A program made the position numbers and the translations under genes. DNA of 64,000 bases, from the IMG/VR virus record IMGVR_UViG_3300035703_000008, positions 144,933-208,932 of that record. One strand, 5' to 3'. Position 1 is the first letter of the stretch; every line of letters begins with the position of its first letter. This document shows, piece after piece, positions 4,057 to 59,384 of the stretch. The notes under the pieces are model-generated. The model ran no database searches. It was given only the letters and a program-made list of their open reading frames with translations, and had not been told where the DNA came from.

Positions 4057-4575
4057 ATGCCATCACCAAGCAAAGCCAAAGGCAACTCGTTTGAACGACA
4101 AACTGCAGATTTTCTCACCAATCTCTACGGCGAAAAGTTCATGCGGGTGCCGGGCAGCGGTGCGTACATTGGTGGCAAAAACACACACCGCAAGCAGTTC
4201 CTACACGAAGGCCAGATACGCAGTTTCAAAGGGGATATCATCCCCGGCGAAAGTTTTCCGCGTTTCAATGCCGAGTGCAAATCCTACAAAGACTTTCCTT
4301 TCCATCAACTTTTTTCTGGCTCAGTTAAGATCCTGGACTCATGGATTGATCAATGCGTGGATGTCGCCGACGACGGTGACTTCAACATCATATTCATGAA
4401 GTTCAACAGAAAAGGCACCTTCGTAGCCGTTCAGGCCCAGCCCAACACTTCCCAACTAATTTTTACTCGGCATTTCAACTACACTTCCGGGCTTCGCGGA
4501 CATTGGATGATCATGGATCATGACATGTTCTGGGAGCTCAACTCTGACACAGTCAAGGCAATCTGCAAGGCATAA
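4057..4575 (+). CDS. PD-(D/E)XK nuclease, Holliday junction resolvase-like
   Basis: SKAKGNSFER...RVPGSGA...GDII...ECK pattern of Hjc-like phage resolvases; lies downstream of gp46. Confidence 0.75.
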   Translation: MPSPSKAKGNSFERQTADFLTNLYGEKFMRVPGSGAYIGGKNTHRKQFLHEGQIRSFKGDIIPGESFPRFNAECKSYKDFPFHQLFSGSVKILDSWIDQCVDVADDGDFNIIFMKFNRKGTFVAVQAQPNTSQLIFTRHFNYTSGLRGHWMIMDHDMFWELNSDTVKAICKA

Positions 4576-5031
4576 CAGGCAGTAAGGGCTCGCACAGGCC
4601 GATTTCTTGTGCCCTAGACCTGGACTTCGAGTCGCAGGGATGGAAGACCCACCGCGCCAGTGGGCACTCAACCACTACCCGCAAGGATGAAGATGGCAAA
4701 GACCTGCCGTTTGGTTGTTTGAACAGGATATAAAAGGCCCAATGAGGGGAGCAAAACCCCAGGCACATGCGTGGTGACGGCGTACTACACATGTGTTGCC
4801 GTTGTGATAAGACGGAGTGAGCAGGTACCGGACAACCGCCTGCTTGGAACAAGTGCGTTCCGTAGCTCTAACGCTGTGTGACTGTGCAACTCGGATGATA
4901 CCAGTTTTTTCTTAGCCCTTTGCTGGGCTAAGTGTGACCGCTTAATCTGGATGATACTGATATCTCGCTTGCGCTCGAAATAAATCAGTGATGAGCGCAA
5001 GCGAAATCACTAGAACTGCGCAGCAGTTCTC
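4576..5031 (+). ncRNA. candidate large structured non-coding RNA (or structured cis element/origin)
   Basis: ~455 nt with no credible ORF in a gene-dense genome; more than 12 consecutive hairpins with G-U pairs and a GCAA loop favouring the + strand; internal bipartite direct repeat. Confidence 0.6.
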
Positions 5032-5044
5032 TTAAATAGATCCT

Positions 5045-6298
5045 ATGAACGTTGACAAAAGCACTTTCTGTGCTGCTCCTTGGTTCCAAATCAAAAATAC
5101 CACGCTTGGAAGTTACTGTAGCTGTTGCGAGATAGACCACGACAAAAGCACTTTCTCGGGCAACAAAGATTTCGCTTGGCCCACGCATCTACCATCGCAC
5201 TGGAACAACAGCGATTATGCTCGATACCTTAGGTCTGAGCTCACCAATGGTGTGCGTCTCCCCGAATGTCACAAGTGTTGGAGCAAAGAAGATGCTGGAC
5301 AACAAAGTCTTCGACAAACTATCAATGACACCGTGGCTGGCAATCGACCTTTTGAATCTAGTTGGATGCAATCCTACTTTAGAAAAAAGCAAGATTACGA
5401 ACATGATTTACTTTTGGCTGCCGATGTACAGGTCACCAATCTTTGCAACTTTGGCTGTGTGATGTGTGAGCCGGGTAGCAGCAGCCATCTCTATCGAAGA
5501 TGGCGGAGAGATCAGGACCATCCGTTGATAAAAAAACAGTTGATGATCTTCCCCAACGGCTATCTTGATCAGGTGAAAGAAACATACATCAACAGAAACA
5601 ACTACGAGCTACTGCAACACGTGATAGATCAATCTCCGCGGTACTTGAAGATCATAGGCGGTGAGCCTTTGTTGGATCAGCAGTTGATGTCTGTGTTGTG
5701 CAATCAGCTTCCCGAAGTCAAATCAAAAATCAAACTTTACATCACTACCAATGGGAGCCAAGATCTCTGCCACGCACAACAACGGTTGTCGGGTTACCAG
5801 GAAATTTTTTGGGTAGTCAGTCTAGAGTCCACGGGCAAACTGCAGGACTATGTGAGAAAAGGCAGCGTATGGTCCGAGATCGAGCACAACATTGACAGGT
5901 TTGTAAGCGAACACAGCAGTCAACACCTTTACATAGCCTATGTGATACAGAGTCTCACATTGGCTGGGCTGCCAACATTGTTGGAATGGGCCCAGCAACG
6001 CAACATTCCAGTGGCTACCAGTTTGCTGGCCAAACCTGAATTCATGGATGTTAGATCGTTGCCCACGGAGATGAAATCAAAGTTGATTGATCAATTGTCG
6101 CAGGCAACAAAGTATTCGATACCGCTGGAGATACAAAATCCAGCATCTGTCAATATTGCAGGGTTGTGCGAGCTCATCGGGCGCACCCAGTACGATAGAT
6201 CTGCCATGTTGGATCTACGAGAGTGGTTGGATTGGTACGATCCCGACCAGCAATGGCGAGACATCATTCCCGAGTGGGCACCATATTTCTCGGAGTAA
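5045..6298 (+). CDS. radical SAM protein with N-terminal Twitch/SPASM-like Cys cluster
   Basis: FCAAPW...CSCC...ECHKCW, then CNFGCVMC (CxxxCxxC), GGEPLL, TTNG. Confidence 0.85.
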   Translation: MNVDKSTFCAAPWFQIKNTTLGSYCSCCEIDHDKSTFSGNKDFAWPTHLPSHWNNSDYARYLRSELTNGVRLPECHKCWSKEDAGQQSLRQTINDTVAGNRPFESSWMQSYFRKKQDYEHDLLLAADVQVTNLCNFGCVMCEPGSSSHLYRRWRRDQDHPLIKKQLMIFPNGYLDQVKETYINRNNYELLQHVIDQSPRYLKIIGGEPLLDQQLMSVLCNQLPEVKSKIKLYITTNGSQDLCHAQQRLSGYQEIFWVVSLESTGKLQDYVRKGSVWSEIEHNIDRFVSEHSSQHLYIAYVIQSLTLAGLPTLLEWAQQRNIPVATSLLAKPEFMDVRSLPTEMKSKLIDQLSQATKYSIPLEIQNPASVNIAGLCELIGRTQYDRSAMLDLREWLDWYDPDQQWRDIIPEWAPYFSE

Positions 6299-17408: not shown

Positions 17409-18626
17409 ATGTCACAAGAACTGCTTGAAAGCCGTTGGGACGAGACCAAAGATGCCCTCATGGAAGGCCTCAAAGGTAGCCGTCGCAATACAATGGGTGT
17501 AATCCTTGAGAACACTCGCAAGTACCTGAAAGAGAATGCCAGCCCCGGTTCTACAGTTTCGGGTAACATCGCCACTCTGAACCGTGTGATCCTGCCAGTG
17601 ATTCGACGGGTCATGCCCACTGTCATCGCTAACGAACTCGTTGGTGTGCAGCCCATGACTGGTCCTGTTGGCCAGATCCACACTCTGCGTGTGCGTTATG
17701 CTTCGACCATGACTGACCAAACAGCAGCCGCTACTTCCGTAGTTGCTGGTGAAGAAGCTCTGTCACCATTTAAGATCGCTGTTGCTTACTCCGCTGGCGC
17801 TCGTGGTGCTGACAACGCTGCTACAACACAAACTGCTGCCCAGGGTTATGCTGGTGGCACAACTGCTCTGCTCGAGGGCAACGGTGGTCGTCAGATCTCC
17901 GTGCAGATCCTGAAGCAGGCTGTTGAAGCCAAAACTCGTAAACTGCAAGCTCGCTGGACATTTGAAGCTGCTCAAGACGCACAAGCCATGCACGGTATTG
18001 ACGTTGAGGCAGAAATCATGGCCGCACTTGCCCAGGAAATCACTGCTGAAATCGATCAGGAGATCCTCCTGAGCCTCCGCAGCCTGGCCACTACAGAGTT
18101 CACATACAACCAAGCTACCGTTTCTGGTACAGCTACATTCGTTGGTGACGAGCACGCTGCTCTTGCTGTTCTCATCAATCGTGTTGCTAACCTGATCGCT
18201 CAGCGTACACGCCGTGGCGCAGGTAACTGGGCAGTTGTTTCGCCCGCTTCGTTGACTGTGCTCCAGTCCGCAACAACTTCTGCTTTTGCTCGTACTACAG
18301 AAGGTACTTTCGAAGCACCTACCAACACCAAGTTCGTTGGAACACTGAACGGCGCAATGCGTGTGTTCGTTGACTCCTATGCCAGCGACTCCACACCTGT
18401 GCTGGTTGGTTACAAGGGTTCGTCTGAGGCTGACGCAGCAGCATTCTACTGCCCCTACATCCCCCTCATGAGCTCTGGTGTTGTTCTGGATCCCACAACG
18501 TTTGAACCCGTTGTGAGCTTCATGACACGTTATGGCTACATCGAGCTTACAAACACAGCCTCGTCCTTTGGCAACGCAGGCGACTATGTTGGTGAGATCG
18601 CTGTTTCTAACCTGTCGTTCTCCTAA
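17409..18626 (+). CDS. gp23: major capsid protein
   Basis: VGVQPMTGPVGQI, AKTRKLQARWT.E..QD..A.HG, EITAEIDQE, FYCPYIPL, MTRYG. Confidence 0.97.
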   Translation: MSQELLESRWDETKDALMEGLKGSRRNTMGVILENTRKYLKENASPGSTVSGNIATLNRVILPVIRRVMPTVIANELVGVQPMTGPVGQIHTLRVRYASTMTDQTAAATSVVAGEEALSPFKIAVAYSAGARGADNAATTQTAAQGYAGGTTALLEGNGGRQISVQILKQAVEAKTRKLQARWTFEAAQDAQAMHGIDVEAEIMAALAQEITAEIDQEILLSLRSLATTEFTYNQATVSGTATFVGDEHAALAVLINRVANLIAQRTRRGAGNWAVVSPASLTVLQSATTSAFARTTEGTFEAPTNTKFVGTLNGAMRVFVDSYASDSTPVLVGYKGSSEADAAAFYCPYIPLMSSGVVLDPTTFEPVVSFMTRYGYIELTNTASSFGNAGDYVGEIAVSNLSFS

Positions 18627-18643: not shown

Positions 18644-18675
18644 AACAAAAAAGCCCCGAAAGGGGCTTTTTTGTT
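18644..18675 (+). terminator. intrinsic terminator after gp23 (likely bidirectional)
   Basis: AAAAAGCCCC-GAAA-GGGGCTTTTTT. Confidence 0.9.
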
Positions 18676-18707: not shown

Positions 18708-18734
18708 AACAAAACCCGCTAACGCGGGTTTTGT
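18708..18734 (-). terminator. intrinsic terminator for the convergent minus-strand gene
   Basis: AACAAAACCCGC-TAAC-GCGGGTTTTGTT. Confidence 0.8.
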
Positions 18735-18750
18735 TGATTAAATGTAGAAT

Positions 18751-19143
18751 TTAATTGGAATCGATTAACGATCTCAAAGTTTGGTTATCTAATGATTCTA
18801 AATTTAAATCTGAATTGTGAAGATGCTGATATGTTGCACGAAGTTGACGAAACAGTAATTCTTTTGGATGAGAAGAAATTGGAGTCACAAATCCTAAATC
18901 AAGATCTTCTCTACTTTGATAGATTTTAGTTACCACATTGCCGTTGACAGTGACTTGTAGTTTTTCTTGAGAAATAAGAAGTTCATTTTGGGCAACTAAA
19001 CTTTGCTCCATTGCTAGAAAGTCAGTGAGATCTTCGGGATTTGTGACGTTAGCTTCTAGCCAAGCGACAAAATTGTAAGGCTCACCGGTGTCAATAACAC
19101 AAGTGATTGTTCCGTCTTGATTCTGAGTTGAAGTAAAAGCCAT
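18751..19143 (-). CDS. hypothetical protein
   Basis: 130 aa, AT-rich; AAGGA RBS and minus-strand TAAATA at 19166-19171. Confidence 0.7.
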   Translation of the reverse strand: MAFTSTQNQDGTITCVIDTGEPYNFVAWLEANVTNPEDLTDFLAMEQSLVAQNELLISQEKLQVTVNGNVVTKIYQSREDLDLGFVTPISSHPKELLFRQLRATYQHLHNSDLNLESLDNQTLRSLIDSN

Positions 19144-19196: not shown

Positions 19197-19802
19197 ATGA
19201 CATCATTTTTCACTCCTCCGGGATATTCTGGCACAGCTGAACTCACAGCTTCTAGTGGGCTTGAAATAGTAAATCAAGGTCTTTGGAAATTTAGTCAATC
19301 TGGTTACAACGACGGAGCTACATTTGGTCTCAGTCTCACCCATCCTAAGCCGTTGTCGGGCGGAACACTTTCTTTATCGGCACAGGCATGGACTATATCC
19401 ACAGTGGGCAACGATCTCACATCTTACACTGATATCAGTACTGGTATTACATATCCTGCGGATCAATGCCAGATCTCAATCACAGGTAAATGGGTGGTGA
19501 AGCGGACTCCTAATTCTAATTCTTTCAACGGTGTAGGAGTGATCTATACCGGGTCAACGGTGACAGATCTTGGATCTAGAGATATGACCACGTATCTACT
19601 AGATTTTGAAAGTAGATCAGCCACATATGTGATACAAGGGTCAGGGGTAACCGGCGGTGCCCAAGATACTTTTTCTAATCGAGTGTTTTCGTGCGTAGTC
19701 GAAGAGTCAGCCAGCACAGACAATAGTAATCGCGAGTTTCAGTCAAACAGCACGGTAAGACCGGTATGGGTATACAGTTTCCGTAAAAGTTGGCAAATTT
19801 AA
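19197..19802 (+). CDS. hypothetical protein (S/T/G-rich, beta-rich)
   Basis: 201 aa; TAAATA at 19186-19191. Confidence 0.7.
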   Translation: MTSFFTPPGYSGTAELTASSGLEIVNQGLWKFSQSGYNDGATFGLSLTHPKPLSGGTLSLSAQAWTISTVGNDLTSYTDISTGITYPADQCQISITGKWVVKRTPNSNSFNGVGVIYTGSTVTDLGSRDMTTYLLDFESRSATYVIQGSGVTGGAQDTFSNRVFSCVVEESASTDNSNREFQSNSTVRPVWVYSFRKSWQI

Positions 19803-20140
19803 TCGCTGAATGCTGAACGAAACTTTTGCCAAAATTCTAGATAGATTGTGTTGCGACTCTCAGGGATGGTATCACACCACTGATCGTGAATTTCCGTTGA
19901 CTTCCAATTGATAATCGGACCGTCCTCGGTAAATTCTTTCCAGGCATCCCCGGCTGCCATAGCATCAGCTACCATTTTTTCATGTTCGAGATGAACCTCT
20001 TGCCAGAGATCTTGCTCCTCCTGCGGCAAAGTCTTCATCCAGACATTTATTTCAATGGGACGACCTGACTCGTCTTTGGGCCATTTAACGGTTATTTTTC
20101 GATGGTTGTCGTTGTGTTGCAAATTTACTATGTCTGACAT
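19799..20140 (-). CDS. hypothetical protein
   Basis: 113 aa; minus-strand TAAATA at 20146-20151. Confidence 0.65.
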   Translation of the reverse strand: MSDIVNLQHNDNHRKITVKWPKDESGRPIEINVWMKTLPQEEQDLWQEVHLEHEKMVADAMAAGDAWKEFTEDGPIINWKSTEIHDQWCDTIPESRNTIYLEFWQKFRSAFSD

Positions 20141-20191
20141 AAAAATATTTATTCCTGGATTATTTTTCGTAAATCTATGTTAAATACTATC

Positions 20192-20269
20192 AACGTATTC
20201 TGCGTTTTATGCGGCGATTAATACCCACCGCGTACCGGATAGAACCCGGATCGGACTTCTTTTAAGGAG
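20192..20269 (+). promoter_or_regulatory. candidate structured 5' leader RNA
   Basis: three stems plus an RBS-sequestering stem between TAAATA (20181-20186) and ATG 20277. Confidence 0.5.
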
Positions 20270-20276
20270 AAAACAA

Positions 20277-20792
20277 ATGGGACGTCCTCTCAAGATCAAG
20301 AAAACTACAACCAAAGATGTTGGTTTTAACAGCTTTGACCAGCTAGAAAACCCAGTTTACCCGGCCACTCTCAACACTACCCAGTTCTTGGGTGTAGTAG
20401 GTGGCGCCAACGCTTCTGTGGCCACTACCAGCTATCCAGTGGTCAAGTGCCAGGTTTTTGGCGCCGGCGAAAGCGCCGAAGAAGCAGGCTACATCATCCG
20501 CCAAAAAGGTTCTACCACATATCTGGTGTATGGTCAGACTTCGGGCAACACCTTCCAGTGCATCTTGGCCAATCAAGCCACTGGAAACCTCACAGCCGGC
20601 AACATGAACATCGCTATTTTTGCCGGCGACAGTTCTGATATCCTTGTCAAGAAGCTCACAAACAAATGGGCCTTAGACTACAGCGACAATCGTTATGTGA
20701 TCAACTTCTTCAGCGACGAAGGAACTGAGATCAAATCGGGAACACGCGGCAACACCAACCCCCTCGCGATCACAGAAAACTATACTTCTTAA
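20277..20792 (+). CDS. putative virion structural protein
   Basis: 171 aa starting MGRPLKIKK; strong RBS, late promoter; sits at the head of the fibre cassette. Confidence 0.75.
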   Translation: MGRPLKIKKTTTKDVGFNSFDQLENPVYPATLNTTQFLGVVGGANASVATTSYPVVKCQVFGAGESAEEAGYIIRQKGSTTYLVYGQTSGNTFQCILANQATGNLTAGNMNIAIFAGDSSDILVKKLTNKWALDYSDNRYVINFFSDEGTEIKSGTRGNTNPLAITENYTS

Positions 20793-37641: not shown

Positions 37642-37663
37642 AGTCTTGTATTTAGCGGCAAGG

Positions 37664-42152: not shown

Positions 42153-42250
42153 AGCGGTATTTAGCGACGCGGACCTTAATTAAGGCACCTGTTCACGGCA
42201 TTTTTTTGGCTCACCAATAAATATGCTTAACCATTAAAAAGGATGAAAAT

Positions 42251-48297: not shown

Positions 48298-49041
48298 ATG
48301 TTATTCGAAAACAACAAATATACTAAGTGGTATAATTTAATAGTTCAAAATGCACAAAATAGGATGACGGACTTATCCTATTTTGAGAGACATCATATCG
48401 TTCCAAAATCTCTCGGCGGCACAAATAATAAAGAAAATTTAGTAATGCTTACAGCCCGAGAGCATTATGTTTGTCACCTGTTGCTGACTAAGATGCTCTC
48501 TGGAGATTCAAAAAGAAAAATGATTTATGCATTTTGGCAGTTATCAAATCAAAAGAATTCAAGTCAAAAAAGATATTGCCCAACTAGCAAAACATATGAG
48601 ATCGCCCGAAAAATGTTTGCAGAGTGCCATTCTGCCAGAATGAAAGAAAATCATCCCTTAAATGATGAAAACAATAAACGCAAACATCAACTTGGAGTTG
48701 ATAAACGCGGACCAACTTCGGTTAAAGGAGCAAAGCGGCCAGAATCAATGAAAGAGAAAATGAGAAATAGAGTATGGACAGAGAAGGCAATACAAACAAG
48801 ATTAGATAATTGTCTCAAGAATGCAGCCGCAAGAAAAGGTAAATCCTGGTCCGAGAAAAAACGACAATCTACTCTTGACACTTATATAGAAAAAAATATA
48901 GATATTGCTTTAAAAATTATCCCTTTGCACGAATCTGGAATGAATAATCTCCAGATATCAAAAGAATTAGGAATTAGTTGGGAAAAAGTCAAATATACTC
49001 TGAAGCATAAAACGGATTTTCTGGCGTATCGGCCGCGGTAA
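48298..49041 (+). mobile_element. free-standing HNH homing endonuclease
   Basis: ERHHIVPKSLGG.N..ENLV.LT.REH...H.LL; basic NUMOD-like middle; C-terminal HTH; markedly AT-rich. Confidence 0.85.
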
Positions 49042-49048
49042 ATACGCG

Positions 49049-59370: not shown

Positions 59371-59384
59371 CTAAATACACGATC

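What the first reader, a model, noticed from the sequence alone, without database searches (positions are those of the whole stretch)
20192..20269. Riboswitch-like leader with potential kissing loops and a sequestered RBS
Seen: ~85 nt between the late promoter and the MGRPLK gene fold as P1 AACGT/GCGTT (loop ATTCT), P2 TATGCGG/CCGCGTA and P3 CCGG/CCGG (loop ATAGAAC). Loop TTCT is complementary to loop AGAA, and CTTCTT can pair with the RBS AAGGAG. The same TTCT in the anti-RBS could alternatively pair with AGAA, which would give a switch. Most late genes here have minimal leaders, so this one stands out. Inference: a cis-regulatory RNA for autogenous protein binding or ligand sensing.
Basis: partly seen in the sequence, partly recalled or inferred. 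Interest (0 to 1): 0.6.

Follow-up and report, generated by a model that had tools for sequence, protein, structure and literature searches.

The report
Known freshwater-2 RNA leader in phage
The three hairpins are real and belong to an RNA family already catalogued as Rfam freshwater-2; here they form the long 5' leader of a late gene for a virion protein in a jumbo phage, while the proposed kissing loops and hidden ribosome site do not hold up.

Summary
Window 20191-20279 (+) is a full-length match to Rfam RF02980, freshwater-2 (68.8 bits, cut-off 49.9).

On 86 distinct relatives from viral contigs, 94% of pair cells are standard pairs against 69% in shuffles. There are 348 double-sided changes against 95. 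G.U pairs outnumber A.C 131 to 3, so the fold is on the sense RNA.

The proposed switch is not supported:
- L1 is hypervariable, and its complementarity to L3 equals chance.
- The Shine-Dalgarno (SD) sequence is predicted mostly open (0.20 paired, 0.44 with a shuffled spacer).
- The spacer's central base varies (U/A/C) without compensation.

New context:
- The element sits 5 nt after a TAAATA box, which lies within 120 nt upstream of 22 of 60 genes in the window. The genome encodes a T4 gp55-like sigma.
- It precedes a conserved protein family starting MGRP[LIV]K, always downstream of a Gp23-type capsid gene.
- The PA5oct homologue was detected in virions by mass spectrometry, but has no such leader.

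Most likely it is a protein-recognised translational operator that also gives the mRNA a protective 5' hairpin. This is inferred, not shown. The family is known; its function is still open.

The parts
20181..20186 (+). TAAATA box, a T4-type late-promoter-like element 5 nt upstream of P1
   Evidence: There are 31 TAAATA sites in the window on both strands, and 22 of 60 genes have one within 120 nt upstream. TAAATAC occurs 9 times against 3.6 expected. The box is present upstream of P1 in 109 of 110 related leaders. The same genome has a T4 gp55-like ORF. Promoter function is inferred; there are no transcript data.
20191..20279 (+). Full-length match to Rfam RF02980, freshwater-2 RNA (Cis-reg)
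   Evidence: 68.8 bits against a gathering score of 49.9, model positions 1-84 of 84. It is the only copy in the 208,932-bp virus record.
20192..20206 (+). P1 hairpin (AACGU / GCGUU, loop AUUCU). The stem sequence varies freely in the family and the loop is hypervariable.
   Evidence: The four inner P1 pairs are 95.8% paired, all with double-sided changes. A stem of 5 bp or more occurs in 90 of 107 relatives, against 21 of 107 for shuffles.
20208..20234 (+). P2 hairpin (UAUGCGG / CCGCGUA). Its four basal pairs, including a U.G wobble, are conserved. The loop (20215-20227) ends in the conserved ACCCA.
   Evidence: 99.7% of cells are paired. Pairs 5 and 6 covary (CG/GC; GC/UA/AU), and U.G is kept in 85 of 86. 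The 3' end of L2 is A-C-C-C/A-R in about 90% of members.
20235..20249 (+). P3 hairpin (CCGG / CCGG), directly abutting P2, with the conserved 7-nt loop AUAGAAC (20239-20245)
   Evidence: All four pairs covary and are 98-100% paired, with 36 distinct stems. When the loop is left free in the search, TAGAAC is found in 130 of 143.
20250..20263 (+).
   Evidence: The block AUNGGRCUXCU is present in 76 of 176 leaders. X is U in 83, A in 22 and C in 13 of 118, with no compensating change in L3 or the SD.
20264..20269 (+). Shine-Dalgarno AAGGAG, 7 nt before the ATG
   Evidence: AAGGAG in 131 and AGGAG in 41 of 177 leaders. Predicted probability of being paired: 0.20 in the window.
20277..20792 (+). 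Gene for a 171-aa protein of the MGRP[LIV]K family, an uncharacterised probable virion protein
   Evidence: 96 of 98 complete ORFs downstream of the motif form one family (alignment). There is no Pfam, PHROG or PDB sequence hit. Homologue EST35_0383 of phage PA5oct is annotated 'structural protein, ESI-MS/MS'.

Best explanation
The element is a member of the catalogued RNA family freshwater-2 (Rfam RF02980). In this window it is the 5' leader of a late mRNA of an uncultivated jumbo phage.

Transcription probably starts a few bases after a TAAATA late-promoter box read by a T4 gp55-like sigma. If so, hairpin P1 sits at or near the 5' end of the RNA. P2 and P3 follow without a linker between them, and a strong, open Shine-Dalgarno sequence lies 2-19 nt after P3.

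The downstream gene encodes a conserved virion protein (N-terminus MGRP[LIV]K). In this lineage it always lies downstream of the major capsid gene.

The most likely mechanism is inferred, not shown. The invariant surface consists of the base of P2 with its U.G wobble, the ACCCR end of loop 2, and the loop-3 sequence UAGAAC. A trans-acting protein, either the gene's own product or another phage factor, would recognise this surface. Once bound so close to the ribosome-binding site, it would limit translation.

P1, whose sequence is free but whose pairing is kept, would act as a generic 5'-terminal hairpin that protects the mRNA.

Identity as freshwater-2 is about 0.97 certain. The operator mechanism is about 0.4.
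For: Identity:
- Rfam hit of 68.8 bits against a 49.9 cut-off, covering the full model.

Structure:
- 94.4% of cells paired against 68.7% in shuffles and 25-54% when partners are slid; 348 double-sided changes against 94.5.
- G.U pairs 131 against A.C 3, so the fold is on the sense RNA.

Sequence-specific recognition:
- P1 and P3 stems vary freely (70 and 36 distinct stems).
- By contrast, the four basal P2 pairs are near invariant, the L2 3' end is conserved, and UAGAAC is kept in 130 of 143 when left unconstrained.

Coupling to one gene family:
- 96 of 98 downstream ORFs belong to one family.
- 13 of 13 loci found by protein homology carry the leader.
- Tandem paralogues each keep their own leader.

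Position:
- P3 ends 2-19 nt before GGAG.
- TAAATA lies 5-9 nt before P1 in 95 of 156 leaders.
- The genome has a gp55-like ORF.
- Other TAAATA genes have leaders of 10-40 nt.

Virion role: the PA5oct homologue was detected by mass spectrometry in virions (PMC7318152).
Against: - No binding partner is identified and no transcript data exist: no RNA run holds the region.
- Homologues in PA5oct and Phosso keep the MGRP N-terminus but have short unstructured leaders. The protein therefore does not need the RNA, and its N-terminus is not conserved because of the RNA.
- In about 30% of leaders P1 starts 15-19 nt after TAAATA, so it is not always 5'-terminal.
- The protein model shows only a generic SH3/Tudor-like barrel (Z 5.4). 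This is no evidence of RNA binding.
- The conserved bases could serve RNA tertiary structure or a host factor rather than a phage protein.
Confidence: 0.42

Rival explanations
1. A constitutive high-expression leader with no regulator. The three stable local hairpins protect the 5' end from decay and lock up upstream sequence so that the strong Shine-Dalgarno sequence stays single-stranded. This resembles the phage T7 gene 10 leader.
For: - The SD is AAGGAG in 131 of 177 leaders, with ideal 6-8 nt spacing.
- The SD is predicted less paired than with shuffled spacers: 0.20 against 0.44 in the window, and native is lower than shuffled in 109 of 176.
- P1 starts 5-9 nt after the promoter box in most members.
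- The downstream gene encodes a virion protein.
Against: Stability alone does not explain the near-invariant P2 base pairs with their U.G wobble, the L2 ACCCR and the L3 UAGAAC, given that P1 and P3 stems drift freely. Homologous genes in PA5oct and Phosso do without any such leader.
Confidence: 0.3
2. This is a riboswitch-like switch in which the spacer CUUCU pairs either with the Shine-Dalgarno sequence (off) or with loop 3 AGAA (on). An L1-L3 kissing contact helps, and a ligand or protein sets the state.
For: - The complementarities exist in the window.
- In the window's subclass, L3-spacer complementarity of 4 nt or more is seen in 53 of 72 leaders against 19 of 72 for shuffled spacers.
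- One sub-lineage has L3 GGAGAAC together with spacer CUCCU.
Against: - L1 is hypervariable. TTCT spans it in 12 of 158, and L1-L3 complementarity equals shuffles.
- About 100 of 176 leaders lack the spacer block altogether.
- Within the block, the central base is U in 83, A in 22 and C in 13, while its would-be partners (L3 A5, the central SD G) never change. About a fifth of the subclass therefore breaks both pairings.
- L3 variants GAAAC, AAAAC and UGAAC occur with an unchanged UUCU.
- The SD is not sequestered in the predicted ensemble.
- The subclass consists of only a few lineages, so the enrichment is inflated.
Confidence: 0.08
3. A DNA-level element. The inverted repeats just downstream of the promoter are operators for a DNA-binding regulator of late transcription, not an RNA structure.
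For: The element abuts a promoter-like box. P2 is a sequence-conserved inverted repeat.
Against: - Paired cells hold 131 G.U/U.G against 3 A.C/C.A. This asymmetry makes sense only for RNA of the sense strand.
- The invariant U.G in P2 would be a mismatch in DNA.
- P1 and P3 keep their pairing while their sequence drifts freely, which a protein-DNA site would not do.
Confidence: 0.03

Closest known systems
Rfam RF02980, freshwater-2 RNA motif (source paper: Weinberg et al. 2017, PMC5737381)
   Same: Same three hairpins, same conserved UAUGCGG/CCGCGUA and UAGAAC, and same AAGGAG-AUG tail. The score is above the gathering cut-off over the whole model. It is a member.
   Different: Nothing structural differs. 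As I recall, the family was described only from aquatic metagenomes, with no classified organism and no recognisable downstream domain. That is from memory: the paper's main text does not mention the motif and its supplements are not held. Here it has a genomic home: a jumbo-phage lineage, a late-promoter box, and a virion-protein gene downstream of the capsid gene.
Phage T4 translational operators (gene 32 leader pseudoknot, gp43 operator hairpin, RegA sites) and bacterial ribosomal-protein leaders such as S15
   Same: A structured or sequence-specific site next to the ribosome-binding site of one gene. In those systems a protein binds the site to limit translation, and the S15 site uses a G.U motif. 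The resemblance is drawn from established knowledge.
   Different: No sequence or fold similarity, and no Rfam hit to any of them. Binding by any protein is untested here. The protein family also exists without the leader.
Phage T7 gene 10 leader and 5'-terminal stabiliser hairpins such as the ompA 5' UTR
   Same: A hairpin at the start of the mRNA of a highly expressed structural gene, followed by an A/U-rich spacer and a strong AAGGAG (established knowledge). The promoter-box-to-P1 gap is 5-9 nt in most members.
   Different: Those elements need no conserved loop or stem sequence, whereas this one has invariant P2 and L3 bases. The transcription start is not mapped here.
Metabolite riboswitches
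   Same: A conserved structured 5' leader directly upstream of a ribosome-binding site.
   Different: There is no multi-helix junction or closing helix, no conserved alternative pairing with the SD, and the downstream gene is structural rather than metabolic.

Membership tests
Rfam RF02980 freshwater-2 | Covariance-model score at or above the curated gathering score, over the full model | tested here: met
   68.8 bits against 49.9, positions 1-84 of 84, E = 2e-8 for the window.
Rfam RF02980 freshwater-2 | Three consecutive hairpins supported by covariation | tested here: met
   94.4% paired; 12 of 17 pairs show double-sided changes; slid controls give 25-54%.
Rfam RF02980 freshwater-2 | Conserved UAUGCGG/CCGCGUA stem, UAGAAC loop, then AAGGAG and AUG | tested here: met
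   All are present in the window. In relatives: TAGAAC in 130 of 143 with the loop left free, and AAGGAG or AGGAG in 172 of 177.
Riboswitch (ligand-sensing aptamer plus expression platform) | Conserved alternative pairing that hides the ribosome-binding site or forms a terminator | tested here: not met
   SD pairing is no higher than with shuffled spacers. The anti-SD candidate is absent in 100 of 176 leaders and is not compensated where it varies.
Riboswitch (ligand-sensing aptamer plus expression platform) | Specific binding of a small molecule | not testable with these tools
   This needs in-line probing or a binding assay. The downstream gene gives no hint of a ligand.
Kissing-loop complex between L1 and L3 | Loop-loop complementarity kept across relatives | tested here: not met
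   Four or more complementary bases in 2 of 158, the same as shuffled loops. TTCT spans L1 in 12 of 158.
Autogenous translational operator | Operator overlaps or abuts the ribosome-binding site of the regulator's own gene | tested here: inconclusive
   P3 ends 2-19 nt before GGAG, and the leader is tied to one gene family. However, homologues without the leader exist.
Autogenous translational operator | The gene product binds the leader RNA | not testable with these tools
   The protein model shows only an SH3/Tudor-like barrel, Z 5.4. No RNA-protein prediction tool is on hand.
5'-terminal mRNA stabiliser hairpin | Hairpin within a few bases of the transcript's 5' end | tested here: inconclusive
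   The TAAATA-to-P1 gap is 5 nt in the window and 5-9 nt in 95 of 156 leaders, but 15-19 nt in 45. No 5'-end data exist.

The most novel reading that the evidence does not exclude
Freshwater-2 would be the operator of a feedback loop in which a virion protein of aquatic jumbo phages (the MGRP family) binds its own late mRNA. The conserved YCCR at the end of loop 2 might help by pairing with the invariant AUGGG at the start codon to form a pseudoknot that closes the start site. This would give an orphan RNA motif a function, and would be a first case of structural-protein autoregulation in jumbo phages.
Probability: 0.15. Interest if true: 0.6.

Novelty: already known. Interest (0 to 1): 0.35.

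Why it matters
The RNA family is already in Rfam, so the structure itself is not a discovery. What this window adds is context for an orphan motif:
- It belongs to a coherent lineage of uncultivated phages, probably jumbo. Their capsid proteins are 68-98% identical to the window's, and contigs reach 352 kb.
- It follows a T4-type late-promoter box.
- It is tied to one fast-evolving virion-protein family placed after the capsid gene.

Cultured relatives (PA5oct, Phosso) have the protein but not the RNA. That gives a natural with-and-without comparison and a tractable system for reporter tests.

Tried and rejected
Searches that gave nothing:
- Megablast, blastn and tblastn of the region, leader and protein against GenBank phages: no match.
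- Pfam, PHROGs and PDB sequence searches of the protein and of 31 relatives: no family.
- Foldseek against PDB: nothing at E of 0.001 or better. BFVD: only uncharacterised phage proteins, including two of Agrobacterium phage Atu_ph07.
- VIA-align wide: best Z 5.4, Tudor/SH3-like barrels, too weak to name a function.
- ESM Atlas: only leads below 0.9.
- The search for related loci with the protein alignment failed for lack of a conserved block.
- Source paper: its main text does not mention the motif and its supplements are not held.
- Sequencing runs: only DNA holders and no RNA run.

Hypotheses considered and rejected:
- GGAC (spacer) pairing with GUCC (codons 3-4), which the window's minimum-free-energy fold shows. 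The Arg codon alternates between CGU, AGA and CGC, so the partner is not kept.
- The palindrome GGACGTCC as an RNA or DNA signal, rejected for the same reason. MGRP is conserved at the protein level.
- Polynucleobacter-1 RNA as an obligatory partner. It is present in only 3 of 5 large related genomes.
- Two of the four pattern hits in prokaryote genomes (Anaerolineales MAGs) are chance matches, with no P3, SD or ORF.

Caveat on sampling: the relatives were collected with DNA patterns that fix parts of the motif. Each conserved part was therefore judged on a set in which it had been left free.

Full report
**Observation.**
- P1: AACGT 20192-20196 pairs with GCGTT 20202-20206, loop ATTCT.
- P2: TATGCGG 20208-20214 pairs with CCGCGTA 20228-20234.
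- P3: CCGG 20235-20238 pairs with CCGG 20246-20249, loop ATAGAAC.
- A spacer ATCGGACTTCTTTT follows, then AAGGAG at 20264-20269 and ATG at 20277.

The gene 20277-20792 encodes a 171-aa protein starting MGRPLK. A divergent gene, 19799-20140 on the minus strand, lies on the other side. The minimum-free-energy fold holds all three hairpins, but its energy is ordinary (z = -0.95). Energy alone would therefore not single the element out.

**Identity.** A scan of the window against Rfam gives a full-length match of 20191-20279 (+) to RF02980, freshwater-2, typed Cis-reg. The score is 68.8 bits against a gathering score of 49.9, over model positions 1-84 of 84.
- a sequence-variable 6-bp P1;
- P2 with UAUGCGG/CCGCGUA;
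- a 4-bp P3 with loop UAGAAC;
- then an unpaired tail ending AAGGAGAAAAcAAAUG.

The window belongs to an IMG/VR virus record of 208,932 bp, estimated 60% complete, and this is its only copy. The source paper (PMC5737381) does not discuss the motif in its main text, and its supplements are not held.

**Relatives and structure.** Three further patterns also hit the limit; each left one part free: P2, L3, or L3 together with the spacer's central base. Thirteen more loci were found through the protein alone.

I built a covariance model from 24 close relatives and aligned 97 matches, 86 of them distinct. All 13 protein-found loci carry the leader just before the gene. On that alignment:
- 94.4% of pair cells are standard pairs, against 68.7% in shuffles and 25-54% when partners are slid.
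- 348 cells carry changes on both sides, against 94.5 in shuffles.

By helix:
- P1's four inner pairs and all four P3 pairs covary freely.
- In P2, the four basal pairs (U-A, A-U, U.G, G-C) and the closing G-C are nearly fixed.
- P2 pairs 5 and 6 swap (CG/GC; GC/UA/AU).

Paired cells hold 131 G.U/U.G against 3 A.C/C.A. The fold therefore belongs to the sense RNA, not to DNA or the antisense strand.

When L3 is left free, TAGAAC is kept in 130 of 143 leaders; the variants are GAGAAC, TAAAAC and TGAAAC. Loop 2 varies in length (5-24 nt) but ends in A-C-C-C/A-R in about 90%.

**The proposed switch.**

*L1-L3 kissing.* L1 is hypervariable, even among the window's nearest relatives. TTCT spans it in 12 of 158 leaders. 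Four or more complementary bases to L3 occur in 2 of 158, which is what shuffled loops give.

*Hidden RBS.* The ensemble probability that the SD bases are paired is 0.20 in the window, against 0.44 with a shuffled spacer. Family-wide, native and shuffled spacers do not differ.

Within that subclass, X is U in 83, A in 22 and C in 13 of 118. Its would-be partners, A5 of L3 and the central G of the SD, never change. About a fifth of the subclass therefore breaks both pairings.

Complementarity between L3 and the spacer is commoner than in shuffles (53 of 72 against 19 of 72). One sub-lineage combines L3 GGAGAAC with CUCCU. These are few lineages, however, and L3 variants occur with an unchanged UUCU. 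I rate the switch as unsupported, though not excluded for the subclass.

*GGAC/GUCC.* The window's minimum-free-energy fold draws this pairing. It is not kept, because the Arg codon alternates between CGU, AGA and CGC. The same alternation shows that MGRP is conserved as protein, not as RNA.

**Promoter and leader length.** TAAATA occurs 31 times in the window on both strands, and 22 of 60 genes have one within 120 nt upstream, mostly 10-40 nt before the start. The MGRP gene, at 96 nt, is one of two outliers (TAAATAC 9 found against 3.6 expected).

The box precedes P1 in 109 of 110 related leaders. The gap is 5-9 nt in 95 of 156 and 15-19 nt in 45; it is 5 nt in the window.

The same genome, just outside the window, encodes an ORF similar to T4 gp55, the late sigma factor (E = 3e-7). 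Two near-complete relatives do too. By analogy with T4 late promoters (TATAAATA, an established fact), this is a late promoter, and P1 would sit at or near the 5' end of the mRNA. That step is inferred: no RNA run holds the region.

**The gene.**
- Of 98 complete ORFs that follow the motif, 96 form one family of 120-512 aa. Two leaders precede other ORFs (L096, L099).
- The family shares the N-terminus MGRP[LIV][KN] and a beta-rich core. It has no Pfam, PHROG or PDB sequence match.
- The model's core (residues 50-145, pLDDT about 90) resembles only generic SH3/Tudor-like barrels (Z 5.4).
- The gene lies on the same strand as, and downstream of, a Gp23-type major capsid gene in 79 of 79 loci that hold both. 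In 25 of them it follows directly.
- The capsid proteins of motif-bearing loci are 68-98% identical to the window's, while locus G+C ranges from 33 to 58%.
- The nearest cultured capsids (63-66% identity) are those of jumbo phages: PA5oct, Vibrio phage 2.275.O, Phosso and the Rak2/GAP32 group.
- A profile of the family finds PA5oct EST35_0383 (MGRPIK..., annotated 'structural protein, ESI-MS/MS') and Phosso gp429 (MGRPLKK...) (virion proteome in PMC7318152).
- Neither record has freshwater-2. In both, a TAAATA box is followed by a short plain leader.

The protein is thus probably a virion component, and the RNA is an addition found in one uncultivated lineage.

**Mechanism.** What needs explaining is the contrast between helices that keep pairing while their sequence drifts (P1, P3) and parts that keep their sequence. 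The sequence-conserved parts are the base of P2 with its wobble, the end of loop 2, and loop 3. They lie on two abutting hairpins, 2-19 nt from a strong SD.

I read this as a recognition surface for a macromolecule. The element would then be a translational operator, with P1 serving as a protective 5' hairpin. The tie to a single gene family points to the product itself or to another phage factor. I give this about 0.4.

The main rival (0.3) is a constitutive leader for stability and high expression. It fits the open SD, but not the invariant bases.

**Verdict.** The hairpins are real and the leader is conserved, but the family is already known. The specific switch model fails the comparative tests. 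The new information is the genomic and biological context of an orphan motif.

Noticed in passing
window 4587-4720 (+): Full-length match to Rfam RF01718, Polynucleobacter-1 RNA (118 bits against a cut-off of 37). It lies in the gap between ORFs 4057-4575 and 5045-6298. The same family is present in 3 of 5 large related phage genomes, one of which has two copies. A second orphan Rfam motif is therefore carried by these jumbo phages.
   Followed up: partly
window-wide, e.g. 37648-37654 (-), 42157-42163 (-), 49039-49045 (+), 59372-59378 (+): In nine genes, TAAATA starts only 10-13 nt before the start codon. If transcription starts as it does at T4 late promoters, these late mRNAs would be leaderless or nearly so.
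   Followed up: partly
G000:C1:142559-142834, about 2.1 kb before the window start: An ORF of about 311 aa, 31% identical to T4 gp55 (late sigma factor) over residues 23-116, E = 3e-7. It is also found in two near-complete relatives, and weakly in PA5oct.
   Followed up: partly
window 18644-18675 (+) and 18708-18735 (-): Two strong terminator-like hairpins face each other, one right after the major capsid gene (17409-18626) and one after the minus-strand gene 18751-19143.
   Followed up: no
L149 1435-1515 and 3155-3233; L201 around 484 and 1666: Some phages carry two copies of the leader, each before its own paralogue of the protein family. One of these starts MGNALK instead of MGRP.
   Followed up: partly
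L096 and L099: Here the leader precedes unrelated ORFs starting MATKK... and MAHTRK.... Both share a motif like GD(L/I)FYD..(N/P)ALR(I/V)SDG, which suggests the leader can be recombined onto other late genes.
   Followed up: no
L137 (Haliscomenobacter MAG) and L138 (Rickettsiales MAG MED657): Among 185,579 prokaryote species genomes, only these two MAG contigs carry a true leader with an MGRP gene. They are probably phage contigs binned into MAGs. Two Anaerolineales hits are chance pattern matches.
   Followed up: partly
window 20215-20227 (loop 2) and 20277-20281: The conserved YCCR at the 3' end of loop 2 is complementary to the invariant UGGG of AUGGG at the start codon, so a pseudoknot is conceivable. 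Covariation cannot test it, because Met-Gly fixes those bases.
   Followed up: partly
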